Part shown: one piece after another, positions 26,401-58,143 of the stretch
Layout of the letters: the number at the start of each line of letters is the position of its first letter
Numbering within the stretch: the first letter of the stretch is position 1
NCBI RefSeq assembly: GCF_023055435.1
Contig: NW_025963890.1
Coordinates: 43,462,001 to 43,526,000, forward strand
Source of the DNA: Haliotis rufescens
Lineage: Eukaryota
DNA length: 64,000 nucleotides
Direction: 5' to 3'
The notes under the pieces: generated by a model
What the model saw: only the letters and a program-made list of their open reading frames with translations
Databases searched by the model: none
What the model was told of the DNA's origin: nothing
Position numbers and translations under genes: made by a program

Positions 26401-27713
26401 TATACTGAAGCAATTTGATTGAGCTCTGTTGAGATTGTTGTTGAGACTTTTAATGGACAAGGAAGAATTAACAGTTTTGACCATGAGTAATTTTAAAGGT
26501 CCAATTCAAAATAACAGGGTATATACTGACTGTATAAAATGTCAACACGATATCATAGTGTAAGTCCTGTTTAGTATATACCATAACGAGTTGGACAGTA
26601 CGACATCTGACATTGCCTTCATGTGATAGAGAACGGAGTATGGATACCCCTTTGGATTTTGTATGAGCTTGTTAGAAGCGCATTGCTTGTCTGTATTATG
26701 ATAAATTGAGTTCTGATCTATATTTTGTTATTTACAGGAGGACAAATTTCCCCTTTCCAAATAACCACTGGAATCCTGGCGATGATTGTCATTTTGGTGA
26801 TGGGGATATTGATCCTGCAACGATTATCAAAACGTGTGGAAAGGTGAGAAGATTACTTCACAAGCAATGACAAATAGGGGCTACAGAAAACTACTGTGTC
26901 ATGTCACTGGTACCAAATCGCAAACGCATTTCATCATTGTATGACTTGGTGATGTGATAATTGTCTTTAAAAGGCATGTCCTCATTCTTTTCAACACATC
27001 TGACAACATTTCAAGACTTTAATTATAATAGTTATGCTAATTATGTTTATTAGATAAGGCATATATCTGGTGGGCCAAAATTGCTCTTATGATGCCTAAT
27101 CCTTTTTTCAGCATCTACTTACACAGTGATATAACTGTTTTGCAGACGTGCCTCCTCAACGTCGCCTCCTCCGGAAGGTCGGACACAGCCGGGCCCAGCT
27201 GGTGATTCAGGGGATCTCCACGACAATAATGGAGGGACACAGCCAGGGCCTACAAGCAGCTCGGGGGATCTCCTCGACAGGGATGATTGGACAACAAAAT
27301 ACTGGGTAATCCATGACAGAGATGTTAATTCCACATCATCCTGCTCACAGACTCACAACGAAGTAATACAACTACGAAGAAAGAATTATGAAATTAGTAA
27401 ACCATTATCAGTTGATAAACAACCGAACGTTCATGGACGCGCAAGGACAACCAAGAGACACCTGTCCGAATCACCAGTTGACACAACATCATCGTTGTCC
27501 TTGTTGGGTGCAACGTCACATGTCAAAGGTGACGGTTTAAGATCAAAGTCAGCCCATGATATACGTGGCATCACTATATCGCCAGAAGTCAAGGAATTGA
27601 TAAAGAAAACTGATTCGATCATATTCATTGAGCAAAACTGCGACTTGTCAAGAGTGAGTGCCACTTATCTTAGTCCAACAGCTGACACATGTCATCATCA
27701 CACAAGTGAGTGA
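23412..27713 (+). CDS. Receptor gene 3: EGF-repeat type-I membrane protein, ~615 aa (longest ectodomain)
   Basis: Exons: 23412-23487 (MMLLTDSVRGVVTPVTLVLLVSTIA), 23975-25072, 26738-26843 (TM ITTGILAMIVILVMGILIL), 27146-27713 (WTTKYWVIHDRDV ... LIKKTDSIIFIEQNCDLSRVSATYLSP). 1848 nt in frame. Confidence 0.9.
24388..24890 (+). repeat. Intragenic 93-bp (31-aa) tandem module array in the gene 3 ectodomain
   Basis: Three near-identical consecutive EPGYMGDKCNVSCPPTCRDGCDKDTGEC[GD]SC units, followed by more diverged units. Confidence 0.95.
25350..25705 (+). pseudogene. Degenerate second ectodomain copy in gene 3 intron 2 (counterpart of 4723-5271)
   Basis: Same junction and flanks as the gene 1 remnant, with frameshifts. 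Confidence 0.75.
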
Positions 27714-27966
27714 GGGAACAACAATTAAAGCCACAGTCAGCAATATGTCATCTATATCACGATGTCTGTAAATAAACGAGCATTGACTACGCACACCAGT
27801 GACTGAAGGCATGAGCAACAATCGCCGCCATCGGTAACGATGCCTCGCAATCAATCAAATTTAAAAGAGCCTGACCACCTGATCCCTATTTTGTCGCCTC
27901 GTATGGGGTGCTTAGGATCTATTCCTTCACGGAATCCAAACATGATTCCAGGATCTCTAAGTATAA

Positions 27967-28132
27967 GGGGCGGTCGGGTAGCCTAGTGGTTAAAGCGTTC
28001 GCTCGTCACGCCGAAGACCCGGGTTCGATTCCCGACATGGGTACAATGTGTGAAGCCCATTTCTGGTGTCCCCCGCCGTGATATTGCTGGAATATTGCTA
28101 AAAGCGGCGTAAAACCATACTCACTCACTCAC
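27967..28132 (+). mobile_element. tRNA(Asp-like)-derived SINE family C, full length
   Basis: A box TAGCCTAGTGG, GTC in the anticodon-like loop, B box GGTTCGATTCC, TSD ctctaagtataa. Confidence 0.9.
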
Positions 28133-28733
28133 TCTAAGTATAAATGTAAATACCATTTTGTTATATCAATCATACGAGTCTTTCCCAGTCAAGATCTTCA
28201 TATAAAAAATCGATATGAAATTAATTGAAATAGTCTGAAATAGTCACGATAACGCTATATTTCACGACCTTGTATATATAAGTCACTGTGACCTCCATCG
28301 CAATATATTTGTGTTTTATCATAGTTATGTTTTTGGGTTGCTAAATGATTTATTTTGACAATCAACTACTCATTCTGTATTTTACAAAAAATGCCTAAAA
28401 TGAATATGGGATTAGCAACTGAACTAATTGAATTGAATGCATTGTCTTAAGCCATGCACTTTAATATATGACCTGTTTCTGCGTTTAATATTCTCCCCAA
28501 TGTACAAATGTCTTATAAAAACCCTTTGTATTACTTCGTGTCTGAACCTGTGTTCAATGTATTTCCGATCCCGGGTGACATTGATTCAAAACGTCCATGG
28601 GCATATGTGCATCACGTCTAAACACACCTGCTTGCACATGCAGGACATGTCGTGGTTATTGATCTGAACAATCTTTGGATTTGAGTAGGGGGGTAAAGGA
28701 ATGCAACTTGAGAATTACTCAAACTGGAGCATT

Positions 28734-28770
28734 AATAATAATAATAATGATGATGATGATGATGATGATG

Positions 28771-28801
<31 letters not shown>

Positions 28802-29075
28802 TAATAATAATAATAATAGGCGGCTATTTATATTGCGCACCCATGGGTATGCTCAAAGTTGGATCACTGTGCACAGTATTCAACCCAAGCTGTCTGTTAG
28901 GCGCCAGAAGGTTAACAACCACATTGCCATCTCATCCTACCGGGTACCCATTCACTGCTGGGTGAGCAAGCCAAGCTGCCGAAACGCGGTCACCCATGAA
29001 AGGACTCTCCGCGACCGACGTTTCTTAACACCTGATTTGTGACCTGTGCGCCGTGCACAGGACCACGTGCCACCA
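28734..29075 (-). mobile_element. SINE family E: 5S-rRNA-like segment, Deu/Nin-like core, L2-like tail and (TTA/TCA)n microsatellite
   Basis: Minus strand reads gttaagaaacgtcggtcgcggagagtcctttcatgggtgaccg (5S box A-C like) and cacccagcagtgaatgggtacc. The (AAT/GAT)n run is at 28734-28818. Confidence 0.65.
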
Positions 29076-31164: not shown

Positions 31165-33060
31165 AGGTCTTTGAAAGGCATTTAAATTGGATACACACAA
31201 GGAGAATATATGGATGTCAACTTCTTTATTATGAGGAACACAACGTGTCGGAGTATATGCTTACTCCTTCAACAGGTGAATGAATGTTACTTACTTACTT
31301 ACTTACTTTGGAGATTTAACGTGCGCTTTCCGACTGATGCGTATTTCGCACTTGGGCCCGGCCAGGCCATTTAATGTGTTTCCGAAAGGGGCGAAAGTGG
31401 TCTGTGCAACCCAAGAGGGGGGGTTTAGGGGTTGCTTATATAGAATTTGGGAATTTTGAGATTTGGAATAGATGCCGATGGGATTGGGGAGGAGAACTAA
31501 AGGAGCTGGGTATGGTGGATGTTTGTTTGTTTATGTGATTTTGATTTGGTAGGTTATTGTGTTTTTAGATGCGTTTTATTAGTTCCGTTTTTATTAAGAA
31601 TACGCCTAAGGCCTTGAAGTTTTCTAGTTTATTTTGTGGGTTTAGTATTGCTTCTAGAGTTAGAGCCTTGTTTAGATTGAGGGTGGTTTGTAATGCGGTT
31701 CGATGTGTTAGGTAGTGTGTGCAGTGGATGAGTGCGTGTTCTGGGGTTTCTGGTTGTTTGCAGTGTGGGCAGTTACCTGTAGTGTGTTTTTAAAAATTTT
31801 TTAGGTGGTTATTTAGGTTGCAGGTGTGTCCTGTTTGGAGTTTAGTGATTACTTTGTCGATTTTTTTGGATGGATGGAGAATTTTTGGTTTGGTTAGTGG
31901 TTTGCTGAGCACTTTTTTGATTTGGCTATTTGAGTTTAGATATAGGTTATGCCATTTTTTTGTGATTTTTTGCTTGTTTACACTTTTAATTTCTGATTTT
32001 GAGATGGGTAAGTTTAAGCTTATTTCTGGGATTTTGAGGGATAGTTTAGCTGCTTTATCGGCGTTTTCATTACCGTATATTCCTACGTGGGCGGGTATCC
32101 ACAAGAAGGTTATTTGTTTGCCTGCCTTAGTTAGGTCGTTGGAGCTTTTAAGTATTTGATTTATTAATTTAGGTCGGTTTTTGGTATTTTTGTTTTGGAG
32201 GGCTTGCAGTCCACTCAGGGAGTCGGTAAGTATTAGGATTCTTTTGTGTTTTTTGGATTCTTGATTATGGAGGGCTGAGGCCATGCCCATTAGTTCTGCC
32301 GTGAATATTGATTGGTTGTTTGGGAGTCGGAAGGATTGTGTGGTTTTAGTTGGTTGTGTGGTATGGACTCCGAAACCTGTATGTTTTGAGGTCGGATGTG
32401 AGGATCCGTCCGTGTAAATGTGACACCAATTTGGCCAATTTTCGTGTATGTACGCTAGTGTGGTAGTTTTAGCTATGTTTGGGTCGGTTTGTTTATTTAT
32501 TTAGCTAGCTAGTGTTGTGTCTATTTTGGGTATTTTAAATTTAGGGGTGAAGATATTCGATTGTTTGCAGTTTTGTTTAAGATTTTTAATTTGGTGTTCA
32601 TTGAGGTAGTTTGTTATTCTTTGGGATATTGGGGTAAGTAAGGGGTGTTGACGAGCTAGAGCTTGGTTTTTGGGGCTGATGTTTTGGTTTATTAAGTTTT
32701 GGATGAGAGGGTTTGATTGGGACGCGGCCCAGAAATTTAAGCTTAGCTGTTCCCTGCGTAGACTTAGTGGCATTTCTCCTGTTAAGGCCTGAAGTGAGGT
32801 GTAGGAGGTGCCATGTTGGGTGCGTGTAATTAGTTTGAGAGCCTGATATTGTATTGAGTCAAGTGAATGAATGTTATGAGGCAGAGAGCATATATATGTA
32901 CATGTAAGGACAACAACATTAATAAGATAACAAAAGGTGGAAAATAACAAAGGGTAGAAACTAACAAGGGAAGCCAACAGATGATTGGCGCTGATAGGTG
33001 ATTTAGCAATAGACAATGGAAGCCAACATTTTACAGTAACTAGCGCTGATGGTATGGAAG
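31165..33060 (-). mobile_element. Penelope-like repeat (pLTR with mutated hammerhead), split by a LINE insertion
   Basis: 31200-31289 plus 32863-33060 is homologous to 43543-44050. Confidence 0.65.
31290..32862 (-). mobile_element. 5'-truncated RNase-H-containing non-LTR retrotransposon (I group, I/Nimb-like), inactive
   Basis: RNase H motifs IYTDGS, AELMG, ILTDS and LWIPAHVGIYGNENADKAAK, plus C-terminal CPHC...EHALIHC. Two in-frame stops (32501, 31790), (AGTA)n tail and 14-bp TSD gtgaatgaatgtta (31276-31289, 32863-32876). Confidence 0.92.
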
Positions 33061-33666
33061 TTATCATAGATAAGTAATAGGTAACGGGCACTGGGCAAAC
33101 TGGAGGCCGGAGGTAATTAGCACTGATGGAAGTGGGCCTTTTGTTTGCCTAGGTGCTGGATCTGATGTTTGATTATTCTGCAACTGGCATGATGGAGGAT
33201 CTTGTGGACGGGTGAAGAAAATTGAAAACCTCTGGGAACAAGGTTGCTATCTCGGCAACGGAGTAGGAAGCTCAGGTGGTTGTTGGACTAAACACTTTTT
33301 CTGATAGTCTTGATTTGTCGCTTATATTTGTATATGCTCAAACACTATTCGTCACGGAAAAAAATACTATTCGTCACAACACAGATGCAGGATGAAGACG
33401 AACATGATGATGCCATATACGCCAGTGTGTCATGACCGCCATAAAAAGTAGGTCACATTCTGCTGGTCCAGCAATTTCATCACCACTGACATCACGTAAA
33501 GCCAATTCATCAACGTCAGTAGTCGTCAGTTCTGAAATCCTATGAGAGCAGCTTCAGTGCCTTTCTCAGTGATGTAGGCGTGTTTACAGGCGGCGCCAGG
33601 AATGTATTGAGTAAGCTGCTGTAGTGTATAATTAAATAATAATAGATTTGGTAATGCTTTGTACAT

Positions 33667-35381: not shown

Positions 35382-38300
35382 ATGAGTATGATGCTCCTGA
35401 CAGACTTCGTACGTGGAATTGTTACGCCTGTAACGCTGATCGTTCTGGTATCCATAGTAACAGGTTTGTTTTCTGACTTATTTTTAGAGAAATCCCAATG
35501 TATCAACTGTATGCTGAGGATGTGCCTTGTTACAAAAAATCCCTTTACATAATACCTGTCCTACCATCTTAATGCATCTCAATAATCCTCATATACTCTC
35601 TCATGGACAGATTAGAAACTATCTGAAAGCTTATGAAGGTTAGATTGCTCACGTAGATATGAAGCCGGTTTGTTAACAACTTCCATTGACGTGTAGCGAT
35701 CATAAAAGTAAATAGTAGTATTTATCCAAGGAACATTTCAATATACTGGCAAATTTACAATATCATAATACATTTTCCTAAATGCCACTCTCCAAAATAT
35801 GGTTACGCTTCATTACGTCCAAATGTACCTGTCAGTAAACTATAACGCTTATAACGAACTGACGGATGTAACCAACATTTTTATTGTCCCGTCCATTTGC
35901 TCCAATATGCTGTATATATGCTTATAACGAACTACGGTTATATAGAAAAAATATCAGTGGCCACGTAGTTTCTTGTATATGACACATAAGCACATCAATA
36001 TATCTTAAGCTTTCTCAAGGTGTTCAGTACATGTACATGTGTATTGTGTGGATAGCCTCGATAGATAGCATCATGTATTACATAGTGGACAACTGAGAAG
36101 AAAGAGGAATGACGATTGTTTTCCACCAAGGGGTAATGCTACTCTATACAAAATAAAATAAAATACTACTCACGATACTTACAAATAAGACATGTTCATT
36201 TCGTCTAATGTGAACTAAACCATACATTATCTTTGGCTTGACACCATAGACAGTCTCTGTAACTTTTTCAGAAAATGTGAAAACTGAACCATCATAATAT
36301 TTAGTGTGTTAATTGAAAACAGTACTTTACATTATTTCGTTCTCAATCGACAGCTTCCTCTACCAGCACACTATGTTCCACCTGTGATAGTTACAACGTG
36401 ATCTGTGTTGACGGTGTGTGTCTACCTCGCTGTGTCAATGTGACGTCATCTGGAAAGTGTCTCCAGTGTCGGGACTCCAGGTTCTATGGTAAACAGTGTG
36501 AACATGACTGTCCAGACACCTGTCTCAACTCTCGCTGTCAGATGAACAACAGCCTGGTTGTGTGTGCAGAGGGATGTGTGGCCGGCAAGAAGGGAGATAA
36601 CTGTGGTGTGAACTGTCCTACAGCCTGTACACAGTGTGAACGTTATGGTGATGGTTGTACAGGGCCATGTCAGAAACCCCGGTATTACGGTCCACACTGT
36701 AGAACACCTTGTTCCTCCAGCTGTGCAGATGGATGTAATAGGATCACGGGGGAGTGTGTCAGCTGTGAGCCAGGTTACACAGGGGACAAGTGCGATGTTA
36801 CCTGCCCCCCCAACTGTGGAGATGGATGTGATAAAGACACGGGGGAGTGTGACAGCTGTGAGCCAGGTTACATGGGGGACAAGTGCGATGTTACCTGTCC
36901 CCCCAACTGTGGAGATGGATGTGATAAAGACACGGGGGAGTGTGGCAGCTGTGAGCCAGGTTACACAGGGGACAAGTGCGATGTTACCTGTCCCCCCAAC
37001 TGTGGAGATGGATGTGATAAAGACACGGGGGAGTGTATAAAGTTAGGTGAGCATTGTTATCATCATTAAAAGAAAAATGGAGAATTTATAGAAACAGTAT
37101 GTTAAATCATGATGGTACACAGTGTGACAAACAACAGACGAAAACGTCACTTCGATAACATCATTCTCCAAATATATCGGACGCTGCTCCGTGGGGTAGT
37201 TACAATGTAGTTGGCCTATAGATGTTCCATGTGTGTACAATGTGTGAAACATATTCTTAATGTCAACCGCCGTGATATACCCGGAATATTTCTAGAAACG
37301 GCCGGTGTTTATCAGTAATGTATGGTGCACTGCTTTGACGAATAAAAGATGATTGATCGCCCAATGGAGCTGATTGGTGTAGATGTCTCAGACATGTCGG
37401 GTTGATATTTGACTTAAAAGGTTGGTTCTTTTGTTGTTTACCGCCACACTCAGCAATGCCTGGTGAGGTGAGGTGAGGTGAGGTGAAATGGGGTTTAGCA
37501 TTTAGCGTTGCACTTATATGTATACTGAACCAAATTAAAAACTTCACAATCCTAAAATTTTAACATTTTGACCAGTTATCATTGTGGGCCCTTATTGTGT
37601 ATTTAAACAGTAATGGCCACGTATTGTCTTCAGATAAATCGATCAGGTGCAGGTGCAGGTGAATCGATCAAAATCATGTGCACAGCACTATAGTGGCGAA
37701 AGTGGTTTTTCACGTGCAACTGGTCACGTGGCCATAATACCGCACGTGTTTTCAGCCATACTTGTTAGCAGTCATTAACAAAAAAAGAAAAACACAAGAA
37801 AACAAAAGACTTTACGGCCATTTATCATGCCACGCCTTTCAAATGTGCAACGTGAACGTGCCATCGGCATGTTTCAGACGGGAACGTCCGTAGCTGAAGT
37901 CGCAAGGACGATGGGTTGTAGTCGACGGACTGTTTATGATTTACAGACGCGTCTACAGCAAACGGGTACAACCGCTGATCGCCCTCGGCCAGGTCGACCA
38001 CGTGTGACGTCACATGCAGAGGATCGTCAGATTGTCTTACTTCACCTCCAGAACCGATTTTTGACGGCTACATCAACCAGAAATAAACTGTTTAGGGGTA
38101 GACTGAGTGCGCAAACTGTTCGAAACCGTCTGAGATCTGCTCACCCTCAAGCACGACGGCCATACTGCGGGCCGATTCTGACTCAATTCCACAGACGTCA
38201 ACGTCAATTGTGGGCACAGCGACACTTACGATGGACTCAGAAGAATTGGAATCAAGTCGTCTTCAGTGATGAATCCCGATTGAATCTTCGATTTGCTGAT

Positions 38301-39057
38301 GGTAGGGCGAGGGTGTGGAGGCGCCGTCATGAACGTTACGCCCAGTGTTGTGTACAGGAAGTTGACAGATTTCGAGGCGGAAGTGTCATGGTGTTGGGTG
38401 CTTTCTGTGACAATGCACGTTCCAGGCTTCTTGTCATCCGTGGCAACCTCAACGCTGCTGCTTACTGCGACCAGGTACTGGCACCATAACTTCTGCCTTT
38501 TATGGCAACACATGGACCCGGTTTGATTTTCCAACACGACAATGCCAGACCCCACACACCAATTTTGACAAGGAATTTCCTTCAGAATGCGGCCGTCAAG
38601 GTCTCCCGACCTCAATCCCATCGAACACGTCTGGGATGCTCTTGACAGAAGTCTGCGCACTCTCCAGAACCAACCACAGAATTTGCAAGATCTTGGCACC
38701 ATTTTGCAGCAACAATGGCGTCGTCTTCCCAATCATGTGTTCACAAGCATCACAAGGTCCATGCGGAGGCGTTGTGTGGCAGTTGTCAACGCACATGGTG
38801 GCCATACACGCTACTGAACTTGTGTGCCATCAGATTCTCGTGCTTGGGACTTATGATTTAAACTGTTGATGTTATTACCGAATACCGTAGGTGCTTGGAA
38901 CAAATTATGGTTACCACCGTTAATAAAAATACATCTTTGGACATTAATGATTAAAAGTTACCTTCTCTGATACATTTGTCCGTTGTATATCATATATGGG
39001 ATTACTTTTAAAAATGTGAAGTTTTTAATTTGACTCAGTATATAATGCGATGTGCAT

Positions 39058-39088
<31 letters not shown>

Positions 39089-40778
39089 AGCTATGTTAGT
39101 GAGCTCGACCACCCGTTTTCGCTAATCGCCTCCAACGACAAACATATGTTGCTCAAGACCAATTCTAACCCGGATCTGCATCGGTCATTGTGTGAGGCAG
39201 CCAAGGGAGATCGTTCTGATTTTAATGTTGTTCAGCAGGTTGTATTTTAGAACGAAAGGTGAAATACACAATATATATAAGTCAAAGTCAAGGGGTATTC
39301 CATAGTGGAATCAAAAGCAACTATTTGGGAGGCATTAGATATTGTAGAGACAGTCTTAAGATTTTAGTTCTTGTTTTCTCAAACCAGCCGTATGCACTGC
39401 AGGTAGTAGGCACTATTGTAGACTCGGTCCTCTGCTTCCTGTCGTGCTATCTCCGTCACAATATGTTACGTCTCGTGTTGTTCAAAAGCAATATGCAGGA
39501 GCTATGGTGCGCTTGTGGTTGTGTTTTTGTAATGGACCAGGAAGAATTTACAGTTTTGACCATGAGTCAACTTAAGGGTCCATTTCAATATAACAGAGAA
39601 CTTGGTTAAGGATCTTGCTGTACAGAATGTGAAAATGATTTGATATTGTATCCAGGATCATTGAAGTAGATTGATTCAGTATAAGTCATAACACGTTTGG
39701 CAATACAACATTTGCCATTGTCTGGAAGTAGTAGTAGTTGCTATAGACGGAGAGATTGACATTAATCAGAGTATGAATACCGCTCCGGTTTAACTTGTTT
39801 TTAGAGCATTGGTCACCTGTATTATGATAAAAACTGCCCTTTTCTATCTATATGTTATCTACAGGAGAACCAACTTTCGAAATTACCACTGGAATCCTGG
39901 CGATGGTTATCTTTCTAGGAATTGTGATATTCATCCTGCGAAGGTTTCCGATATGTGTGGAAAGGTGAGAAGATCATTTCACCCACAATGCCAAATTCAG
40001 GCTATATATAACTTTTTGTACCATGGATTTCAAAACATAAACGTATTGTATCAATGTATCACTGTTGTCTTTAAAAGGATAATCTTCATTCATATGAACG
40101 GATCTGTCAACATTTTAAGACACTTTATTACAGGTATGATAAGTTTATTATCAAAGTCATATCTGGTGGTCCAAAATGGCTCATATGCTTCCTCATCTTG
40201 TCGTCAACATCTGCCTACATTGTGAAATTGCTGTTTGCAGACATGGTTCCTCAACGTCGCCTCCTCCAGAAACTAGTACACAGCCAGGATCTGCTGGCAA
40301 CTCTGGGAATAAACACGACAGTAATGACTGGACAACTAAGTACTGGGAAATACATGACAGAGATGTAAATTCCACATCCTCCTGCTCAAAGACGACTCAC
40401 AACGAAGTAATACAACTACGAAGAAAGAATTATGAAATTAGGAAACCATTAACAATTGATGAACAGCCGAACGTTCTTGGACGCTCAAGGACAACCAAGA
40501 GACCCCTTTCAGAGCCAACAGCTAGCACAACGTCATCGTTGTCGTTGTTGGGTGCAACATCACATGTCAAAGGTGACGGTTTGAGGTCAAAGTCAGTCCA
40601 TGATGAATGTGATATCACTATATCGCCAGAAGTCCAGGAATTGATAAGGAAAACTGATTCGATCATATTCATTGAGCAAAACTGCGACTTATCAAAAGTG
40701 AGTGCCACTTATTTAAGTCCAAAAGCTGACACGTGTTATGAACTGCATCATACAAATGAGTTAGGGAATACTGACTGA
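35382..40778 (+). CDS. Receptor gene 4: EGF-repeat type-I membrane protein, ~470 aa (close paralog of gene 3)
   Basis: Exons: 35382-35463 (MSMMLLTDFVRGIVTPVTLIVLVSIVT), 36354-37046, 39865-39964 (TM ITTGILAMVIFLGIVIFIL), 40241-40778 (WTTKYWEIHDRDV ... LIRKTDSIIFIEQNCDLSKVSATYLSP). 1413 nt in frame. Confidence 0.9.
37523..39040 (+). mobile_element. Tc1-family DNA transposon in gene 4 intron 2
   Basis: 26-bp TIRs tactgaaccaaattaaaaacttcaca / tgtgaagtttttaatttgactcagta (2 mismatches) and TA TSD. Confidence 0.93.
37827..38817 (+). pseudogene. Tc1-like DDE transposase pseudogene
   Basis: Paired-like HTH N-terminus, GRPR, VVFSDES, FQHDNARPH and SPDLNPIEHVW. Premature TAA at 38487-38489 and a frameshifting deletion near 38585. 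Confidence 0.92.
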
Positions 40779-48577: not shown

Positions 48578-51359
48578 ATGCCATCAAGGACAACATTCTC
48601 GGTGGTCCTGAACTCAGTGGTGCTGACATGTATTCTGCTGTTATTTCCCATTGAAGGTTAGTAAAGGAATAATGTTTCACATGTAGTCAGAAGCCTGGTA
48701 GATCATGGACTCATTAATTCAAACGTTTCGAGGAGTGAAATAGTGTTTCATTTGAAGGAGTAAATGGATGCTAGATAGTTTGATTACATTTATTTTATTT
48801 TTCCATTTTGCAAGGTGTTTTCTTTTGTGCTGACATCTCTTTCCTGTGTTATCTCTGCCTTTTTCTCACTGCAACGACAGCTCCTACATCAACGACACTG
48901 TGTAACGAGTGTGACGGTAACAACGTTACCTGTGAAAATGGCGTGTGTCTACTACGTTGCGTCCGTTTGACGTCATCTGGAGAGTGTCTCCAGTGTCTTG
49001 ACTCCAGGTTCTATGGTAAACAGTGTGAACATGACTGTCCAGACACCTGTCTCAACTCTCGCTGTCTGATGAACAACACCCGTGTTGTGTGTACAGAGGG
49101 ATGTGTGGCCGGCAAGAAGGGAGATAACTGTGCCTCTTCTTGTCCTTCGTCCTGCTCACAATGTGAACAGACAGGAGATGCCTGTATTGGACCATGTCAA
49201 AACGACCAGTATTACGGTTCACAATGTGAAACTCCCTGTCCTGATAACTGTTTGGATGGCTGTAGGAATGACACGGGGAGCTGCAAAAGCTGCGTGGACG
49301 GTTACACAGGAGAGTACTGTAATGGATGTGTGGTGGGCTACAGTGGGGGGTACTGTAACATTGCTTGTCCCCCACACTGCCTGGACGTATGTGATAAAGA
49401 CAAGGGTGAGTGTGGCAGCTGTGTGACAGGTTACACAGGGACGTTCTGTAATGAAACCTGTCCCTCCAACTGTACTCCGTGTGAGCAACGTAATGGGCAG
49501 TGCATTGGACCATGCCCCGACAGCCTGTACTACGGCCCTTTCTGTTCTATACAATGCCCTACAAGTTGTGCGGGATGCGACAAGACGACAGGGAGATGCA
49601 TTCTCTGTGCCGATGGCTACACACAGTGTACGGACGGTCTCTGTCAGAAGGGTGACTGTGACTCAGGTGGGTGGTACACATGAACTTTTGCCTAAACATC
49701 AAACATGTTCATATGCTATTTAATAGCTATTAAAAGTATATCGACATAAGTCTATTTGATATTGATCCATAAACACATGCTCATCATATAGTCGGAATCG
49801 AACAATCGCCTTCTATTGACTAAGAGAGGGGTTTTGTCACTTTTATTTTATCTAAAATGTAATTTTCGTTTTAGTGAGGATTTGACAAACAAGTTAAGAT
49901 AAAATGATGTCTTTAAAAAGAAACAAAATGACTAGAATATAACGAAAGTACCTCCTGTCACTGTCTCCGATATAATATTATTTACATTGGTATACATGTG
50001 TGTGATATGATTTACAATGTACATGTAACCGTTTTTTTCTATTAACACGTTTCAAACGTTAGATGTGCGATGAATTAAATATTTCATCTTGTCCTTTCAT
50101 TAAAAAGGGAGGGCAATATTACAATGAAGTGCATACATTATATCCGTGTTGGGAATCGAACCTGGGCTTTCTGCGTGACTGGCGAAAGGCTTTAATGACT
50201 CGCAATTGACTTGTCTTTGCATGTGTTTGTGACGTGTACCGGTGGGGCGGGATACGCTCGCATTTTCTCGAACACCTGGTTTCTTTATTATTTGATAGTG
50301 ATTCATAAACACTTGCTCATGACATAGTAGGGATCGGAACAGTCGACTCTGCTTTGTGCAGATATTTCTATTGGATATGGAAGGGGTTTTGTAGCTTTAT
50401 TTATATCTAGGCTACACCTCGCTTCGAACATAATAAACAGTGTACTCATATTTGTATTACTACAGGTAACACGATTTTGACTCTGAAAGTGACAGCTGGA
50501 GTGCTGGCGATGGCTGTGTTGCTTGGAACGATCTTGGCGGTGGTCATTCTGGTCAGACGCAGGAGCAAATGCCAACACGGGTAAGAATGTTAATGTACTA
50601 TCATAATCACATAGCAAATACATGTTTAGAATACGTCCATAATATTAGCTTCTTGTTTTCTCATATGCAAACACAGTTGTGAATGTGAATCTGAAATTTT
50701 AGAATTGAAAGTGTTTAAATTATATGTCACTTTCAGAATAATGTGCTTGAATAATGATTCATCAACACTAAGGGGACTATTTACTAAACTGCACTTTTTT
50801 TCTCAATAGTGAGATGTCTCCCCGTCAAGACATTCCACAGGACCTTGGTCAGAGTGACAGCAATGAATACTGGGCCCACAAATACTGGGAAATACATGAC
50901 AAGGAATCTGGCTCTGAATCTGGGTCAAACATCTCACCTGTGCTCCCGTTACCCTATAGACGATCTGAACAAGCCAAGGATATCCCCCTAGGAAATGTCA
51001 CAGTAAGGAAACCAATGCCGTATAATACTGACGTGTCACCGGCGGCTGTGGTACACCAGGATGGACATGATTCGACTTATGAACCATTTGTTGTGGAATC
51101 GCCACAGTCGGACGTGGTGGACAGTGTCGTGGCTGGTGCAGCAGAGGAGGACATCATGGGTACGACACTCAGTAACTCTGGTCCTCGGACAAATCAGGAA
51201 GGGGGCGGAGTCATGAAGAATCCCATCCAACCTCATATTCAGCACCTTATCAGAAAGACGGAATCTATAATAGCTATTGAACAACATCTTGATTTAGCAA
51301 ATATCAATGTCAAATATCTTACACCTGATAAAGTTAACACCAGTTCAAATACATTATAA
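48578..51359 (+). CDS. Receptor gene 5: EGF-repeat type-I membrane protein, ~509 aa
   Basis: Exons: 48578-48656 (MPSRTTFSVVLNSVVLTCILLLFPIE), 48881-49666, 50466-50580 (TM VTAGVLAMAVLLGTILAVVILV), 50810-51359 (YWAHKYWEIHDKE ... LIRKTESIIAIEQHLDLANINVKYLTP). 1530 nt in frame. AATAAA ~51436. Confidence 0.9.
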
Positions 51360-51469
51360 TTGCGTCAAAAGGATCGTGGAATCATTTTAGATGTTCTTTC
51401 ATAATATGCTTGTTTTGAGTATATTCATACGTTGCAATAAATCTTTGTCAAAATTTTACTGTTTCTTTT

Positions 51470-51657: not shown

Positions 51658-53132
51658 TTATATACTTTGTACTAAGTTTGTGATATATGTAAAAGCAGAG
51701 TCCATTGTACGATTCCGACTATATCACAAACGTGTGAAACGTGTCATAAATACATGCAAAGACAAGTAAATTATTCACCCGAAAATACACTGGAACATAT
51801 GGTACAATTCAAAATAGGGAATTGCAATGGACATCACTTTTGTCACTGATGTGTCAAATTTGGAAATACCAATGCTTCTTATCCCTTGAAATTTAGATAA
51901 GGTTGATGTATGTTGGATGTAGGATAAGCAAACACGAACATGATAAGACGTTAAACAACTTATCAATTAAAACTACAGTTTTTGTGTATGTCAAACATCT
52001 CCCCTATAATCTCCATTACTACCGGAAGTATTCCATTGTAGTGTGTAATTTACGAAACAGTCACTGTTGCAAGTTCTTCTTTGACAAGGCATTGAAAACG
52101 ACTACGCTAATTTCATTCTGAAATATTAAACAGTACATATTTTAAACTACATTCGAGGCTCTACCATAATTTTGACAATGACATGTGATATATTTTTGCA
52201 AGAGGCCCACATTTACCTGAACATTTAACAAGTGAATGAAACTTGTGAGACATACATTTTTATGCATCATCGAACGCCATGTTTTATAAGACGTGCACAC
52301 ACACACACACACTCACACACACACATGTATGTAATACTTAACCAAAATATGTGTATATCTCACAGGTATATGTACATGCCATAGTGTTTATGTTACAGTT
52401 GATGTGTAAAATGTGATCTCAATATATAAAATGCCTTAATATTTCTGTCATTTTACACATTGACTGCATATGTTTTCCCCTGCTTATCAGACTACACGAG
52501 GAAGACCTCCGAATACAATCATCTGACACGAACACTATTTTAGAGTAAAATCACATCTCACTCTTTGGAAAGTAGCATATAAATGCATTTAATAATAATC
52601 CCACATTAACTGTTTACATAATGATGTAATGATTTCGACACTTAATTTGATCAATCTTGAAAGATAATAAAAAAACAACAACAGCTATTTAAGCTTCCTG
52701 CAATTGATTGTTGATGTGTATTCACGTGATAATATTACATTAATAGAACATTAAATATAACATCATTAGTTTCAGTTTGGATTTCCTTGCAACGAAGGTC
52801 ACACGGACAGAATAGTTTTACAAAAGTTCAGATGAGTCATATATGTGCATGTAGGCACGTCGAAAACATGCGTAAGCATGCGGTTTCAATATTTTTTCAA
52901 GATTTGTGTATTTGAACGAACATATGCCTCTCCTGACAGCGCATGACAGGGTTGCAGTTATCCTTTCCTCATAATGTTTGTTTTGTTGGTTAGGAGGAGG
53001 ACAGTATAACGTGCAACTAGTTTCTTAAGAAGACAGCTGCTCACTTCCAGTCGTAACTAGTTGAAATCACCAGTAACCATTTGGATACATCAGATTGATG
53101 AAGGTAATTATAACTTTGGATTATGTAAAATA

Positions 53133-53416
53133 GTGAGTGAGTGAGTGAGTTGGGTTTCACGCCGCTTTTAACATTATTACAGTTATATCACGGCGTGTCA
53201 GCTTAATGTGGGAGGAAAGCCCGAAGTGATGCAGGTCTCAGACGTTTACCACTTCGGTGAAACCCACGAGCACGGGTATGGAGCTGACAAACCTAGAAAC
53301 ATAATCGGGGCGAACCGGGATTCGAACCCACAATCATAGGTTTCTGGCGTGCCCAAGGGACGCAACTCTGTACAGCGAATCGCGGTGCCTTAGACGACTG
53401 GGCCACCCGTGCCCCC
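53133..53416 (-). mobile_element. SINE family A, full length
   Basis: TSD ttatgta[a/t]aata. Confidence 0.9.
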
Positions 53417-53692
53417 TTATGTATAATATCATGAGGTTTGTTGCGGGTTTATTCAAGGTACAAATACAGTGAATAAGATGGTGAAAATAAGCTTCTGATT
53501 GCTTGGTGACAGAACCTTTTGTGCGTTTGATTTGGGATGATAAAATATATTTCGAAAAGTTTTAAATTTTGAACTCGTGAGTGAGTTTGGATTAATGCCG
53601 CTTTGGGGAGTATTTCAGTTATATCACGGCTAGTCAGATTAACGTGAGAGGAAACACGAAGGAATGCATACGTACGGTAACCTCTTTTATGA

Positions 53693-53862
53693 GTGAGTGA
53701 GTGAGTGAGTTTGGTTTTACGCCGCTTTTAGCAATATTCCAGCGATATCACGGCGGGGGACACCAGAAATGGGCTTCACACATTGTACCCATGTCGGGAC
53801 TCGAACCCGGGTCTTCGGCGTGACGAGCGAACGCTTTAACCACTAGGCTACCCGACCGCCCC
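53693..53862 (-). mobile_element. SINE family C nested in an old family A remnant
   Basis: TSD ctcttttatga. Confidence 0.9.
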
Positions 53863-54013
53863 TCTCTTTTATGAAACCCACAGGCAAAGGTAGGAAACTA
53901 AACAGGACAAACAGGTATTCGATCCCATGATCATAGTGTTATTATGAAACTGTTTGATAAAACGGTCATAGTTCTGTTACTTGACGTGTCTTACTGTGTT
54001 TCTGTATAGAAAT

Positions 54014-57000
54014 ATGGCGCCTTTCGGTTCGATATTGCGACACCCGGTGTTCTGTGTGGTAGCGGCCATCTGCATGGTACCCGTCACAGCAGGTTTGTTT
54101 TTAACACCAATAATTTATGATAAATGGAGAGTAACGATCATGAATACTTTTTAGTAAACAATGTTTAAAGCTGAAACAAATACAAATATACTGTTCATAT
54201 TGCCTATTCGAAATATTGCAGATTGCGATATATACTTAAACAATTTGTAGTCATTTCTGGTTTCCGAGCTCAAAAGTTGTATTTTCAACGGAGACCGTTT
54301 ATAATCTAATGTACTAAGTGTCATTGTTATGATTCTATTAAGAATGTTGCAATTCCATTGATTAAAAAAGTACCAGGTGCCGAAACAATACATTTCAATG
54401 TAGACCTCCAAATCATGTCTCGTCTGACTTGTCACATGATCAGTATTGACCCTTCACGTGATGAATATTGACTCGTCTGCTAGAAACAAGATGGCGTCTT
54501 GTATACTACCATTTTCCGCTTTGCAGCTAAGTTACTGTAAAGAAACAGATAACGGCTTAATGGCTTCATAAATTTGAAAGTGAATTTCGGTATAACAAAA
54601 CAACTGATTACTTTTGACAAGGTCATTATGCGAAAAAAAGGAGCCTCGGACCCGACTGATTCGTCGGTCTGACGAGACCCCGGCCGTCGGTCTCGATCCG
54701 GTCAGACGATCTCAGGGGTCGGGTCCTCGGGTCCTTGTTTTCGCATATGGACCTATTAAGAGTAATTTTTTGTTTATTGTTTATCACTTTTTGTGAAAGG
54801 TTCTTCAGTGTGCTCCTCCTGCACCGGTAACAACGTGACCTGTGCTGACGGTATATGTCTGCCTCGCTGTGTCAATGTGACGTCCTCTGGAGAGTGTCTC
54901 ATGTGCCGTGATTTCATGTTTCACGGGGTACAGTGTGAAACCCTCTGTCCACACACCTGTCTCAACGCGCGTTGTCAGATGAACAACTCCCATGTTGTTT
55001 GCAAAGAGGGATGCGTGGCTGGCAAGAAGGGAGATAACTGTGGTGTTGACTGTCCGCCATCTTGTACACACTGTGTAGGGGATGAATGTATAGGTCCATG
55101 TTTGAACCCCCGGTATTTTGGTCCTAAATGTAAAACACCATGTCCCGAGGACTGTAATAGTGGCTGCGATAAAAACACAGGGAAATGCAAACCATGTTCT
55201 GTAGGTTACATGGGGGAGCACTGTACCACTGTTTGCCCCTCGGGATGTAAAGATGGGTGTCACCAGGAGACAGGGGCATGTAACAGCTGCATGCCTTGGT
55301 ACGGTGGGGACTATTGTGACGTTTGTCAGACAGGGTACCGCGGGAAGTACTGTAACATTAATTGCCCAGCCTTATGTACAGCGTGTGAGCGCCATGGGAA
55401 TAAGTGTATCGGAGCTTGCCTGAATATTTGGAATTACGGTCAATATTGTAATCTCTCATGCCCATCCAACTGTAGAGAGAGGTGCCAGAAGTTGACGGGG
55501 GAGTGTGATGGTTGTGTACCGGGGTTTAGAGGCACATATTGTAACGTTACCTGTCCAGTAAACTGCACAGAGTGTACGCGTCTTGCTGATGAGTGTGTGG
55601 AACCGTGTACTGACAGCAAGTCCTATGGAGCATCCTGCCAACACCACTGCCCAGTCAACTGCAAGGACGGCTGTTACAGACTGACGGGCGACTGCATCAA
55701 CTGTAACCCTGGTTACAGAGGGAGATACTGTAAGCTTCCGTGCAGCAATGGAGCATGTAATCCAGGTGAAGTTATTACAGGAGACTGTTTACACCCCTTT
55801 GGATTTTCTTTAGAAATGAGTGAGTGAGTGAGTGAGTTGGGTTTAACGCCGCTGTTAACATTATTCCAGTTATATCACGGCATGTCAGCTTAATGTGGGA
55901 GGAAAGTCCGAAAGTGATGCAGGTCTAAGACGTTTACCACTTCGGTGAAACCCACGAGCACGGATATGGTGCTGACAAACCTAGAAACATAATTGGGACG
56001 AACCGGGATTCGAACCCACAATCATAGGTTTCTGGCGTGCCCAAGGGACGCAACTCTGCACAGCGAATCGCGGCGCCTAAGACGACTGGTCCACCCGTGC
56101 CCCCTCTTTAGAAATGGTATATGGTATATGATATTCATGCTTGGTTAAAATGAATGTATTACAGGCAGTAAAGATTAAACGGTATAAACAAATTGGAAAT
56201 ATAATCTTTTTATAGCAATGGCTGCAACGGCGTATTGATGTGAGATCAGGAGTGAAATTATGTAGAATAAGGGGTAATATAGTGGTAAATAAGAACATTG
56301 CGAAAAGCATGACAAGTTCTAGCCCATCTAGTTCTTGTCGAGGTTGTTTGATGCTTGATCAGGGTTACGGCATTCGAGGCCTCGGTGGGGCTTTTGGGGA
56401 CGTGTGGAGGACGCATCGGTGACGAAAATGCTTTTGGCTTGTGCCGTTTGTTACCGTGTTTTTTTTAGGTGTAAAAAATGACTTGCCTTTGCATGTGTTT
56501 GTCACTGGTGTCACCGATGGGGCAAGATGCAATCACCTTTTCGCGAACACCTAGTATCACCACTATTTGATAGAGATTCATAAACACATGGTAATGATAT
56601 AGTAGGAATCGTACAACCAACAAGAGATTTCTATTGAATATGGAGGGGTTGTTGTCGCTTTTAATGTAATTGCAATGGTTCCGTTTGTCATTCTAATTGA
56701 TGCGAAATATTTCTGAATATATAATCTATATTGAACTTTCAACTAGCGATGATTATGCATTCATATATATCATTTTAGGTGACCCGAGGCTGACTACGAA
56801 AGTCGTTGGTGGCGCAGTAGCTGTGGTGGTGCTGCTGGGCTTGTCTATAGCTGGGTCGGTGCTAATGAAGCGTTATAGAAGCCACCATAGGTAGGTATAG
56901 GGTCTGTAGTCATATCGTTTAAACATCATTACCTCATTAAAACGGTGTGTCACTTAAAACGATTCAACTGCATCAAATAATCTATACTTTAAACATGTTC

Positions 57001-58143
57001 ATATCAGTGCCCTGCTTATATCACTAACCCGCTTTTCTGAGATCTCACTTTAGATATTATGTCAGGAAAATTTAGAACATACTTTCAATACACATATTTA
57101 TCACATTGTATAGTTTTACAATGATACATGTTCCATTTAATCGTTATATTATTCCACCCGTGAAGATTCCGGGGAAGAATAGGTCTTCAGCAACCCATGC
57201 TTGCCTTAAAAGGTGACTATGCTTGTCGTAAAAGGCGACTAACGGGATCGGGTGGTCAGGCTCGCTGACTTGGTTGATGCATGTAATCGATCCCAATTGC
57301 GTGGATCGATGCTCATGACATTAATCACTGGATTGTCTGGTCCAGACTCGATTATTTACAGACCGCCGTCATATAGCTGAAATATTGCTGAGTGCGGCGT
57401 TAAACAACCAACCAACCAACCAACCAACGTTATATTATTCCGTTCCTTGACTAGTATTCAGTTGGTTAGATATGTTTGTCTGGTGACTAACTGAAAAGCA
57501 GTTGTGAAACAAGTACTGAACACATTCTATGTTTGTATTTGACAGTCGGGTTCCTGCCGCCGCTTGCCGAGCTGAAACAACACGTCGATGCAACTGTGGC
57601 GATTACTGGACACACAAATACTGGGAAATAAATGAACAGGACGTGAACTCGGATCAATGTTTAGAGGAAGTAGCTCGGCCCACTTCGCGTTATCCCCATA
57701 CACTGGCAAGAACAACCCGCGCTGAAAGCAGACCAGAGAAACCGGAACATGAACGACGGGGGTCCAACAAAATAGAGGAACAAAACGCCAACTCTATATC
57801 TGTTCCAGGGACTCTCAATATTGAGACATTTCAGGGGTCTAACACTGGGGCAGGATTGACAATGACTGCTTCCTACTGCGAAGCACGTCCTACTGTAATT
57901 CATGATGATGATGATGATGATGGCTTGTATCCAATTGATGAGAAAGTATCTTTTCTGAACACTGAAGGCGATCCAATACTTGCCTCAGCCAAAAGTGAAA
58001 ATGGTATTGATTATTGTCATATGTCACTTGACACCCAAAGGTTGATTAAAAAGACTGATTCGGTCCTATTCATAGAGCAAAACTGTGACATGTCCAAAGT
58101 CAACGTCAAATATCTGACCCCAAAGTCCAAACTTAAAACTTAA
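54014..58143 (+). CDS. Receptor gene 6: EGF-repeat type-I membrane protein, ~584 aa (most diverged ectodomain)
   Basis: Exons: 54014-54092 (MAPFGSILRHPVFCVVAAICMVPVTA), 54800 (or 54809)-55765, 56779-56890 (TM VVGGAVAVVVLLGLSIAGSVLM), 57546-58143 (YWTHKYWEINEQDV ... LIKKTDSVLFIEQNCDMSKVNVKYLTP). 1755 nt in frame. Confidence 0.9.
54620..54754. mobile_element. Palindromic MITE just upstream of the gene 6 ectodomain acceptor
   Basis: aggtcattatgcgaaaa / ttttcgcatatggacct ends with nested internal inverted arms (ggacccgac/gtcgggtcc, tctgac/gtcaga, gagacc/ggtctc). Confidence 0.8.
55819..56104 (-). mobile_element. SINE family A, full length
   Basis: 12-bp TSD tctttagaaatg. Confidence 0.9.
57156..57427 (+). 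mobile_element. SINE-like family B, full length
   Basis: 14-bp TSD cgttatattattcc. Confidence 0.9.

What the first reader, a model, noticed from the sequence alone, without database searches (positions are those of the whole stretch)
27570..58135. Second conserved C-terminal tail module LI[RK]KT[DE]S[IV][IL][FA]IEQ..D[LM]..[VI]...YL[ST]P
Seen: g3 ISPEVKELIKKTDSIIFIEQNCDLSRVSATYLSP, g4 ISPEVQELIRKTDSIIFIEQNCDLSKVSATYLSP, g5 IQPHIQHLIRKTESIIAIEQHLDLANINVKYLTP, g6 MSLDTQRLIKKTDSVLFIEQNCDMSKVNVKYLTP. Shortened versions occur in g2 (MSSESLQLLELI..ANADVRYLTT) and g1 (LSNETIVVFL..SVHVHYINT). This is a ~34-aa helix-strand-loop-strand-like pattern ending in a Tyr motif, fixed at the C-terminus despite a hypervariable linker. 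Inference: a small interaction or oligomerisation domain working together with the KYWEI motif. I recognise no named domain.
Basis: partly seen in the sequence, partly recalled or inferred. Interest (0 to 1): 0.8.

Follow-up and report, generated by a model that had tools for sequence, protein, structure and literature searches.

The report
Abalone EGF-receptor tail docking module
A tandem family of abalone (Haliotis) EGF-repeat membrane receptors ends in a conserved ~34-residue tail module with an invariant tyrosine; it matches no named domain, is found only in abalones, and is most likely a docking site for signalling partners.

Summary
The four tail sequences are in the window letter for letter (g3 27576-27677, g4 40620-40721, g5 51225-51326, g6 58021-58122). 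The predicted gene-7 copy lies 138 nt past the window end.

The window is Haliotis rufescens. The genes are type-I membrane proteins: EGF-repeat exon(s), a transmembrane (TM) exon and a last exon that encodes the cytoplasmic tail. RefSeq calls them MEGF10/11/6-, CED-1-, SREC- or PEAR1-like.

The module occurs 17 times in the 1.33-Gb genome, all in one ~214-kb cluster, always downstream of a KYWEI-type motif. Synonymous sites between divergent paralogs are saturated. Orthologs in H. rubra and H. asinina keep the module while the linker drifts, so selection maintains it.

A profile search of 1.84 billion proteins found it only in four Haliotis species. Pfam, PDB sequences and Foldseek gave nothing.

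AlphaFold2 models the whole tail as disordered. The module alone is modelled as helix-hairpin at pLDDT ~70, which suggests folding on binding.

The module is composite. The terminal V.V.Y[LI][ST][PT] element and the YWEI block also occur in a larger Haliotis tail superfamily on other chromosomes. LI.KT.SIIFIE[QE].CDL is specific to this cluster.

The g1 "short version" is not supported and the g2 one only marginally. The function is inferred, not shown.

The parts
27576..27677 (+). g3 C-terminal module ISPEVKELIKKTDSIIFIEQNCDLSRVSATYLSP
   Evidence: Six-frame regex and open-frame read. Identical to the end of RefSeq H. rufescens LOC124153046 (P0002).
40620..40721 (+). g4 C-terminal module ISPEVQELIRKTDSIIFIEQNCDLSKVSATYLSP
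   Evidence: The H. cracherodii ortholog P0001 is 94% identical over the tail.
51225..51326 (+). g5 C-terminal module IQPHIQHLIRKTESIIAIEQHLDLANINVKYLTP
   Evidence: The H. rubra ortholog P0008 keeps it.
58021..58122 (+). g6 C-terminal module MSLDTQRLIKKTDSVLFIEQNCDMSKVNVKYLTP
   Evidence: H. rubra and H. asinina orthologs P0006/P0019/P0007 keep it. Lies inside exon 4 of a spliced transcript contig. AlphaFold2 helix-hairpin model.
27146..27713 (+). g3 last exon (cytoplasmic tail and stop); KYWVI at 27297-27311
   Evidence: CAG acceptor at 27143-27145 and phase-2 donor after 26843 reproduce the P0002 junction ..KRVE-R-RASS...
40241..40778 (+). g4 last exon; KYWEI at 40338-40352
   Evidence: Acceptor inferred from the P0001 junction ..ICVE-R-HGSS.. 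and the DNA. KYWEI.
50810..51359 (+). g5 last exon; KYWEI at 50880-50894
   Evidence: ATAG acceptor and phase-2 donor after 50580. Inferred only, by comparison with P0008. KYWEI.
57546..58143 (+). g6 last exon; KYWEI at 57616-57630
   Evidence: Transcript contig X2 record 8 joins 56777-56888 to 57544-58214. GT-AG placement.
56777..56890 (+). g6 transmembrane exon (..VVGGAVAVVVLLGLSIAGSVLMKRYRSHH)
   Evidence: Hydrophobicity scan. Spliced contig piece 56777-56888.
54798..55763 (+). g6 EGF-repeat exon (ectodomain)
   Evidence: ORF 54793-55827. Weak PF00053 EGF_laminin match. Spliced contig piece.
52844..53101 (+). g6 first exon (5' end of the transcript contig)
   Evidence: X2 record 8 and X1 record 1 pieces at 52844/52854-53101, joined to 54798.
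26710..26843 (+). g3 transmembrane exon (open frame; exon start not fixed)
   Evidence: Paralog blastp and hydrophobic stretch. Matches the N-terminus of P0002.
39831..39964 (+). g4 transmembrane exon (open frame; exon start not fixed)
   Evidence: Matches the N-terminus of P0001.
50411..50580 (+). g5 transmembrane exon (open frame; exon start not fixed)
   Evidence: Matches the N-terminus of P0008.
15377..15403 (+). g2 degenerate terminal element NADVRYLTT (KYWEI at 14996-15010); the helix/first-strand part is missing
   Evidence: HMM 4.8 bits, 2 of 1000 shuffles as good. The g2 KYWEI block scores E 8.5e-9.
8634..8660 (+). g1 SVHVHYINT: claimed short version, not supported
   Evidence: HMM -0.4 bits, 101 of 1000 shuffles as good. 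The tail has TFFDMEDK in place of KYWEIHDK.
63733..63747 (+). g7 KYWEI motif; its C-terminal module lies 138-257 nt beyond the window end
   Evidence: L006 = C112:43526138-43526257.

Best explanation
SHOWN. The window carries part of a ~214-kb tandem array in Haliotis rufescens. Its genes encode type-I membrane proteins with an EGF-repeat ectodomain, one TM helix and a ~150-190-aa cytoplasmic tail. The tail is modelled as intrinsically disordered, apart from short conserved islands:
- a membrane-proximal [DE]YW.HKYWEI.D.D block;
- a weaker SSLSLLGA-type island;
- the C-terminal 34-36-aa module S..[IV]Q.[LM][IT].[KR]T.S[IV][IL]F[IL]E[QE][NH]CD[LM]S.[VI].V.Y[LI][TS][PT], with invariant T, S, E and D and nearly invariant Y and L.

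The module is under purifying selection and is restricted to Haliotis. It is composite. Its terminal V.V.Y[LI][ST][PT] element, like the YWEI block, is inherited from a larger Haliotis superfamily of MEGF-like receptor tails. The preceding helix/first-strand part is an elaboration specific to this cluster.

INFERRED. The module is a docking element that folds on binding, not an autonomous domain. It is modelled as a short amphipathic helix plus a beta-hairpin whose first strand is hydrophobic on both faces. It would present the conserved terminal tyrosine to a cytosolic partner.

The most likely mechanism runs as follows. Ligand-driven clustering of the EGF ectodomains leads to tyrosine phosphorylation of the YWEI and terminal Y[LI][ST]P sites by a Src-type kinase. 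SH2 or PTB adaptors are then recruited. This is how Draper, PEAR1, Jedi-1 and MEGF10 signal (established knowledge), but here through different, lineage-specific motifs.
For: Anatomy and expression:
- ORFs, TM exons and tails.
- RefSeq models with the same splice.
- A spliced 2099-nt transcript contig covers all four g6 exons, with partial contigs from other runs, three studies and two species labels in all.

Reality and selection:
- 17 copies, all in C112:43.32-43.54 Mb.
- dS is saturated or not computable while dN is 0.18-0.58 between divergent paralogs.
- Ortholog alignments show two conservation peaks, at KYWEI and at the module.
- Per-column information shows T, S, E and D invariant.

No known domain.

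Taxon restriction: an HMMER profile against 1.84e9 representatives found 9 real hits, all Haliotis.

Disorder and conditional fold:
- Whole tail pLDDT 52, with a local rise to 78 over DMSKVNVKYL.
- Isolated module pLDDT 70 with helix and hairpin.
- The language-model neighbours of the TM+tail protein are single-pass adaptor proteins with Tyr-motif tails such as LIME1 and SCIMP. This is a lead only.

Composite origin:
- A second family of Haliotis MEGF-like tails has EYQ.LHRYWEI .. PVLADC .. SYTHL.RD.. V.Y[IL][ST]P at the end.
- hhalign gives E 1.4e-5 for the YWEI block and E 0.0019 for the terminal 11 columns.

Co-occurrence with KYWEI.
Against: - No phosphorylation, partner or phenotype data exist. 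The mechanism rests on analogy.
- Pro at +3 of the tyrosine is not universal. Thr replaces it in 7 of 23 unique sequences, so a strict pYxxP (Crk/Abl-type) site cannot be the whole story.
- One copy (L012) has Ser for Tyr.
- 34 contiguous conserved residues are long for a linear motif, and 11 conserved hydrophobic positions would also suit a small folded or oligomerising unit.
- The AlphaFold2 confidence is only moderate and the alignment behind it is shallow (12-16 sequences, one genus).
- The tissue of expression is unknown because run identities are coded.
Confidence: 0.5

Rival explanations
1. The module is an autonomous mini-domain, a helix packed on a beta-hairpin, that drives homo-oligomerisation of receptor tails. 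Clustering of tails, not adaptor docking, would be its primary function.
For: - The isolated module is modelled as H11-19/E23-28/E35-40 at pLDDT 70-80.
- About 11 hydrophobic positions are conserved, and strand 1 (S-I-I-F-I-E) is hydrophobic on both faces.
- Conserved length and an absence of indels across 23 unique sequences.
Against: - In the context of the full tail no strands are modelled and pLDDT is 59-78.
- 34 aa without disulfide or metal ligands is marginal for a stable fold. The Cys in NCD is not invariant.
- No structural neighbour was found.
- No multimer model could be run.
Confidence: 0.25
2. The module is a trafficking signal, for ER export, polarised sorting or endocytosis, read by coat adaptors. 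It is not a signalling element.
For: - Its position is fixed a few residues from the C-terminus in all copies.
- It has a tyrosine with hydrophobic neighbours.
- A [DE]xxxL[LI]-like string occurs in 7 of 16 tails.
Against: - The tyrosine does not fit YxxPhi, because Pro or Thr sits at +3.
- The dileucine-like string is absent from most paralogs.
- Known sorting signals are 4-7 residues, not 34.
- The upstream YWEI would be a better YxxPhi candidate.
Confidence: 0.12
3. The module is a beta-arch, amyloid-like homotypic assembly motif. It would resemble RHIM/cRHIM in function and nucleate higher-order signalling complexes.
For: - A strand-turn-strand of about 20 aa with Asn/Asp in the turn, at the end of a receptor tail in an expanded, probably immune-type family.
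- It is isolated in an otherwise disordered tail.
Against: - No [IV]Q[IVL]G core in any of the 16 tails.
- It is not Gly/Asn/Gln-rich.
- No partner protein with the same motif was found anywhere else in the genome.
Confidence: 0.05
4. The similarity reflects only recent duplication or gene conversion among neighbouring paralogs, or a nucleotide-level element, with no selection on the peptide.
For: - The genes are tandem neighbours.
- g3 and g4 are 82% identical over the whole tail.
- Several upstream copies are near-identical (L013-L016 and L008/L010/L012).
Against: - Between divergent paralogs, module nucleotide identity is only 54-75% and dS is >=0.8 or saturated, while invariant residues persist.
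- Linkers in the same exon are unalignable.
- Orthologs in four species keep the module.
Confidence: 0.02

Closest known systems
CED-1 / Draper / MEGF10-11 / PEAR1 (Jedi-1) engulfment and adhesion receptors
   Same: - A type-I membrane protein with many EGF-type repeats, one TM helix and a disordered tail whose conserved islands are tyrosine-centred.
- RefSeq names the Haliotis proteins after these families.
- The likely logic is the same: phosphotyrosine docking after clustering (established knowledge for Draper/Shark, Jedi-1/Syk and PEAR1/PI3K).
   Different: - No NPxY in any tail, and no ITAM with canonical spacing except one chance-like case.
- No EMI domain was detected in the exons scanned.
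- The profile search with the tails found no protein of these families outside Haliotis.
- The tail motifs YWEI and KT.SIIFIE..CDL..V.YL[ST]P are unrelated in sequence.
Scavenger receptor class F (SREC-I/II, SCARF1/2)
   Same: An EGF-repeat ectodomain and a long, low-complexity cytoplasmic tail. Some cluster members are named SREC-II-like by RefSeq.
   Different: No detectable tail similarity. The tail here is shorter and organised as discrete conserved islands. Membership rests on automated naming from generic EGF similarity only.
Second Haliotis MEGF-like tail superfamily (RefSeq 'SREC-I-like', 'CED-1-like', 'draper-like'; contigs C605, C611, C568, C19 and others)
   Same: - The same overall plan: TM, then Y..[LV]..YWEI.[DE].D, an acidic linker, and V..Y[IL][ST]P a few residues from the end.
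- hhalign gives E 1.4e-5 for the YWEI block and E 0.0019 for the terminal element.
   Different: - It carries PVLADC[FY]PG and a SYTHL.RD[IV]F[VI]DD block (a YxxL site) where this cluster has LI.KT.SIIFIE[QE].CDLS.
- These parts do not align significantly.
- Its genes lie on different chromosomes.
Transmembrane adaptor proteins with Tyr-motif tails (LIME1, SCIMP, LAT-type)
   Same: A single TM helix and a disordered tail with spaced tyrosine motifs. They are the nearest neighbours by protein-language-model features, with scores 0.85-0.92.
   Different: There is no sequence homology and those scores lie in the range that shuffled proteins reach. Those adaptors lack ectodomains. This is an analogy only.

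Membership tests
Any Pfam-A domain (for the tail module) | A match to a curated profile at or near its gathering score | tested here: not met
   0 families for the g4, g5 and g6 tails. Only sub-threshold noise for the others (E 0.03-0.16, 12-15 bits against a 27-bit cut-off).
CED-1/Draper/MEGF10 family | Multiple EGF/laminin-type EGF repeats in a type-I ectodomain | tested here: met
   PF00053 EGF_laminin at E 5e-8 for the g3 exon, weak for g6 (E 0.034). Cys-rich 31-aa repeats. The TM exon follows.
CED-1/Draper/MEGF10 family | N-terminal EMI domain | tested here: inconclusive
   No EMI hit in the large ectodomain exons. Exon 1 and full-length proteins were not scanned.
CED-1/Draper/MEGF10 family | Cytoplasmic NPxY (PTB/GULP/CED-6 site) and YxxL/ITAM | tested here: not met
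   NPxY in 0 of 16 tails. An ITAM pattern in 1 of 16. Only the single YWEI-type YxxI is universal.
CED-1/Draper/MEGF10 family | Role in engulfment or phagocytosis | not testable with these tools
   No functional data. The literature search found no paper on these Haliotis genes.
SREC / SCARF1-2 | Sequence-related cytoplasmic tail | tested here: not met
   The tail profile found only Haliotis proteins among 1.84e9 representatives.
pYxxP SH2-ligand motif (Crk/Abl/RasGAP type) | Tyr with Pro at +3, conserved across the family | tested here: inconclusive
   Y in 22 of 23 unique modules. P at +3 in 16 of 23 and T in 7 of 23. Phosphorylation is not testable here.
ITIM / ITSM | [ILVS]xYxx[ILV] or TxYxx[VI] | tested here: not met
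   The terminal motif is V.Y[LI][ST][PT]. An ITIM pattern occurs in only 2 of 16 tails and not at the module.
RHIM / cRHIM amyloid signalling motif | [IV]Q[IVL]G core tetrad within a ~20-aa beta-prone segment | tested here: not met
   Core pattern in 0 of 16 tails.
Tyrosine-based (YxxPhi) or dileucine sorting signals | YxxPhi, or [DE]xxxL[LI], conserved at the module | tested here: not met
   Pro or Thr at +3 of the module tyrosine. The dileucine-like string occurs in 7 of 16 tails only.

The most novel reading that the evidence does not exclude
The helix-hairpin module is a new kind of homotypic assembly element. On receptor clustering, the doubly hydrophobic SIIFIE strand and the V.V.YL strand of neighbouring tails would zip into an intermolecular beta-sheet, in the manner of signalling by cooperative assembly seen with RHIM/cRHIM. 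The terminal tyrosine would act as a phospho-switch that permits or blocks assembly. This would be a mollusc-specific solution for turning EGF-repeat recognition receptors into signalling platforms.
Probability: 0.07. Interest if true: 0.75.

Novelty: new variant of a known kind. Interest (0 to 1): 0.35.

Why it matters
Molluscs carry large, fast-evolving arrays of MEGF/SREC-like single-pass receptors. These arrays keep appearing in hemocyte transcriptomes and in resistance loci, for example the MEGF-rich SudRes1 region of Biomphalaria (PMC12297450). How they signal is unknown, because their tails lack the NPxY and ITAM motifs of Draper, CED-1 and MEGF10.

This finding defines the conserved tail elements of one such array in abalone: a YWEI block and a 34-aa C-terminal tyrosine module. 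It also shows that the two tyrosine elements are shared by a much larger set of Haliotis receptors.

That gives concrete handles for finding the downstream adaptors in a commercially and ecologically important animal: peptides, Y-to-F mutants and pull-down baits.

It is a lineage-restricted motif without functional data, so the general interest is moderate.

Tried and rejected
- Pfam scans of seven exon products and of all 16 aligned tails gave nothing.
- PDB sequence searches with one tail and with the module profile gave only noise (eS10 and XaxB, E 0.09-1.2).
- Foldseek of the module model against the PDB gave a best E of 1.5.
- ESM Atlas with the TM+tail protein returned only generic single-pass adaptor look-alikes.
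- A word search with the g4 tail found only three short Haliotis models.
- A word search restricted to the tail of a second-family protein (P0037, residues 350-475) found only itself. Whether the wider tail superfamily exists outside Haliotis therefore stays open.
- hhalign of the whole module against the second-family C-terminal block aligned only the last 11 columns. The global alignment was not significant (E 0.08).
- Regex tests for NPxY, ITAM, ITIM, the RHIM core, TRAF sites, YxN, YxxM and YxxQ showed no pattern conserved at the module.
- The SIM-like (DS-IIFI-E), FHA-like (pT..I) and BRCT-like (pS..F) readings of KTDSIIFIE were considered from memory only. They were not pursued, since such short patterns are common and cannot be tested here.
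- Two literature searches found no paper on these genes or motifs.
Exons were searched separately, and full-length context came from the RefSeq proteins that the tools returned.
Full report
**What is in the window**

The window is eukaryotic, about 40% G+C, with sparse ORFs. It carries seven same-strand paralogous genes, g1 to g7.

- Each gene has a large Cys-rich exon built of ~31-aa EGF-type repeats. Pfam gives PF00053 EGF_laminin at E 5e-8 for g3 and a weaker match for g6.
- A short exon encodes a single hydrophobic helix followed by basic residues.
- A 180-200-aa last exon follows.
- The word search identified the organism. RefSeq protein LOC124153046 of Haliotis rufescens (P0002) is letter-identical to the g3 TM exon plus last exon, which also fixes the splice between them.
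- The window is G000:C112:43462001-43526000 of a 1.33-Gb assembly.

Exons were searched one by one, and full-length context comes from the RefSeq proteins the tools returned.

**Check of the observation**

- All four quoted peptides are present at 27576-27677, 40620-40721, 51225-51326 and 58021-58122, each a few codons before the stop.
- A four-sequence profile finds 17 copies in the whole genome (16 at E 6e-29 to 6e-11, one truncated copy at E 0.004). Every copy lies in C112:43,321,801-43,535,499, and nothing credible lies elsewhere.
This is correct: the module lies 138-257 nt past the window end (L006).
- Across 23 unique paralog and ortholog sequences the module has no indels. T12, S14, E19 and D23 are invariant. 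K11, I15, I18, L24, Y31 and L32 are nearly so.
- The 'shortened versions' are weaker. g2 keeps only N.DVRYLTT (4.8 bits; 2 of 1000 shuffles as good). g1 is not distinguishable from shuffles (-0.4 bits; 101 of 1000).

**Is it selection or recent ancestry?**

- Between divergent paralogs the module's nucleotide identity is only 54-75%. NG86 dS is 0.8 to above 3 or not computable, and dN is 0.18-0.58.
- In the same exon the linker cannot be aligned.
- Ortholog trios or pairs from H. rufescens, H. rubra and H. asinina show two conservation peaks. The KYWEI block is 73-93% identical and the C-terminal module 73-87%, against 7-60% in the linker.
- The consecutive gene numbers of the H. rubra models on one contig (LOC124289766 to LOC124289775) suggest that the array itself is conserved.

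So the peptide is maintained by purifying selection.

**Expression**

Logan contigs from four runs were laid on g6. The runs come from three studies and carry two species labels. One 2099-nt contig is spliced exactly as exon 1 (to 53101), EGF exon 54798-55763, TM exon 56777-56888 and last exon 57544-58214. It is therefore RNA-derived, and the tail exon is part of the mature message. The tissue is unknown.

**Known domains and taxon range**

- Pfam gives nothing for the tails.
- PDB sequence searches give nothing.
- A Foldseek search with the module model gives nothing.
- An HMMER profile covering KYWEI to the C-terminus (16 sequences) was run against 1.84 billion representative proteins. It found nine real hits, all from H. 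rufescens, H. cracherodii, H. rubra or H. asinina, plus two spurious bacterial repeat proteins.
- RefSeq names the hits 'MEGF10/11/6', 'cell death abnormality protein 1-like', 'scavenger receptor class F member 2-like', 'PEAR1-like' or 'uncharacterized'. These names derive from generic EGF similarity.
- The tails contain no NPxY and no canonical ITAM or ITIM.

**Structure**

- AlphaFold2 on the g6 tail gives mean pLDDT 52 and pTM 0.17, which means disorder. It shows one short helix (SLDTQRLIK) and a local pLDDT rise to about 78 over DMSKVNVKYL.
- The isolated 48-residue module gives mean pLDDT 70 with a helix at 11-19 and strands at 23-28 and 35-40.
- Moderate confidence that appears only locally in a disordered tail is what is usually seen for segments that fold on binding. 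That reading is an inference.
- Strand 1 (S-I-I-F-I-E) is hydrophobic on both faces, so one face must be covered by something other than the helix. That could be a partner or another copy.

**The module is composite**

- A profile of the KYWEI block hits 13 places at E<1e-8, all in this cluster, including g2.
- A weak hit on another chromosome (C605:34.008 Mb) turned out to be the last exon of a different MEGF-like gene. It reads ..EYQALHRYWEIREADMNTES..TYTTIGARYISPIDDDKPYSE.
- Following that gene uncovered a second and larger set of Haliotis receptors, named 'SREC-I-like', 'CED-1-like' or 'draper-like'. They lie on contigs C605, C611, C568, C19, C10, C46 and C58.
- Their tails follow the plan TM, Y..[LV]..YWEI.[DE].D, PVLADC[FY]PG, [SD]Y[TS]HL.RD[IV]F[VI]DD, then V..Y[IL][ST]P and the end of the protein.
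- Profile-profile alignment supports homology of the YWEI blocks (E 1.4e-5) and of the terminal 11 columns (E 0.0019). It does not support homology of the 22 residues before them.
- So the terminal tyrosine element and YWEI are old features of Haliotis MEGF-like tails. LI.KT.SIIFIE[QE].CDLS is an elaboration found only in the C112 cluster.
- The fam1 linker island SSLSLLGA[ST] may correspond to PVLADC. This was not tested.

**Mechanism**

Shown: a receptor-like architecture, a disordered tail, tyrosine-centred conserved islands, co-occurrence of the two islands, purifying selection and expression.

Inferred: the module is a docking site that folds on binding and works together with YWEI. The most likely route is tyrosine phosphorylation and recruitment of SH2- or PTB-type adaptors after ectodomain clustering, by analogy with Draper, Jedi-1, PEAR1 and MEGF10 (established knowledge).

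Against a simple pYxxP site, Thr replaces Pro at +3 in 7 of 23 unique sequences, and the invariant T, S, E and D lie upstream of the tyrosine.

Rivals:
- a self-contained oligomerising mini-domain (0.25);
- a trafficking signal (0.12);
- an amyloid-like assembly motif (0.05);
- mere recent ancestry (0.02, contradicted).

**Novelty**

The genes are annotated but the tail elements are undescribed. No Pfam family covers them, and two literature searches found no paper on them. MEGF-rich receptor arrays are known as candidate immune loci in other gastropods (PMC12297450).

I rate this a new variant of a known kind: a lineage-specific tyrosine-motif tail on MEGF-type receptors. Interest is 0.35.

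**Limits**

- The range outside Haliotis is untested for the wider superfamily.
- No multimer modelling was available.
- The alignments are shallow and come from one genus.

Noticed in passing
L055:4815-5876 and 7746-7955 (G000:C605:~34.00 Mb); also L056-L085: A second, larger superfamily of Haliotis MEGF-like receptor tails on several chromosomes. They carry four conserved Tyr islands: EYQ.LHRYWEI, PVLADC[FY]PG, SYTHL.RD[IV]F[VI]DD and a terminal V..Y[IL][ST]P. At least 25 tails were found with one 69-aa query.
   Followed up: partly
window 27400-27560, 40440-40600 and the equivalent linker positions of L008-L016: A third, weaker conserved island in the linker (SSLSLLGA[ST]S, PAVLGASA, LLTLLCASA). 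It may correspond to the PVLADC block of the second family.
   Followed up: no
window 8313-8696 (g1 last exon): The g1 tail has ..SYDNIDNTFFDMEDK.. where its neighbours have ..YW.HKYWEIHDK... This is a natural Tyr-to-Phe version of the KYWEI block on a tail that also lacks the module.
   Followed up: partly
window 31790-33091 (-) and 37827-38489 (+): Transposon remnants. RT/RNase H-like ORFs of a non-LTR retroelement lie between g3 and g4, and a Tc1/mariner-like transposase ORF lies inside the g4 intron. Both were identified by eye from the translations, not searched.
   Followed up: no
window 19408-20635 (+): A ~1.2-kb tandem repeat that is open in all three + frames (CTHYCSVHTTVLYTLLF.. units). 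It is probably a minisatellite and not coding.
   Followed up: no
window 52991-53975, 55749-56142, 57128-57521: Very high-copy repeats sit in the g6 introns. Summed contig depth is 1e5-1e6 in all four runs, with many false joints. This is why read laying listed over a thousand joints.
   Followed up: no
window 57948 and 58128: Transcript contigs differ from the assembly in two places. A 9-nt in-frame insertion (GAGGACATC) lies in the Asp-rich linker in two runs. A 1-nt insertion two codons after YLTP in two other runs changes only the last residues. The residues after the tyrosine motif seem free to vary.
   Followed up: no
L012 (C112:43404315-43404449), L017 (C112:43384650-43384724), L009: Some upstream array members look damaged. 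L012 has Ser for the module tyrosine. L017 is cut by TAA after ..SIIFIE. The L009 tail frame is only 83 aa. These are possible pseudogenes or alleles.
   Followed up: no
window 62208-62360: An assembly gap (153 N) interrupts the EGF exon of g7.
   Followed up: no
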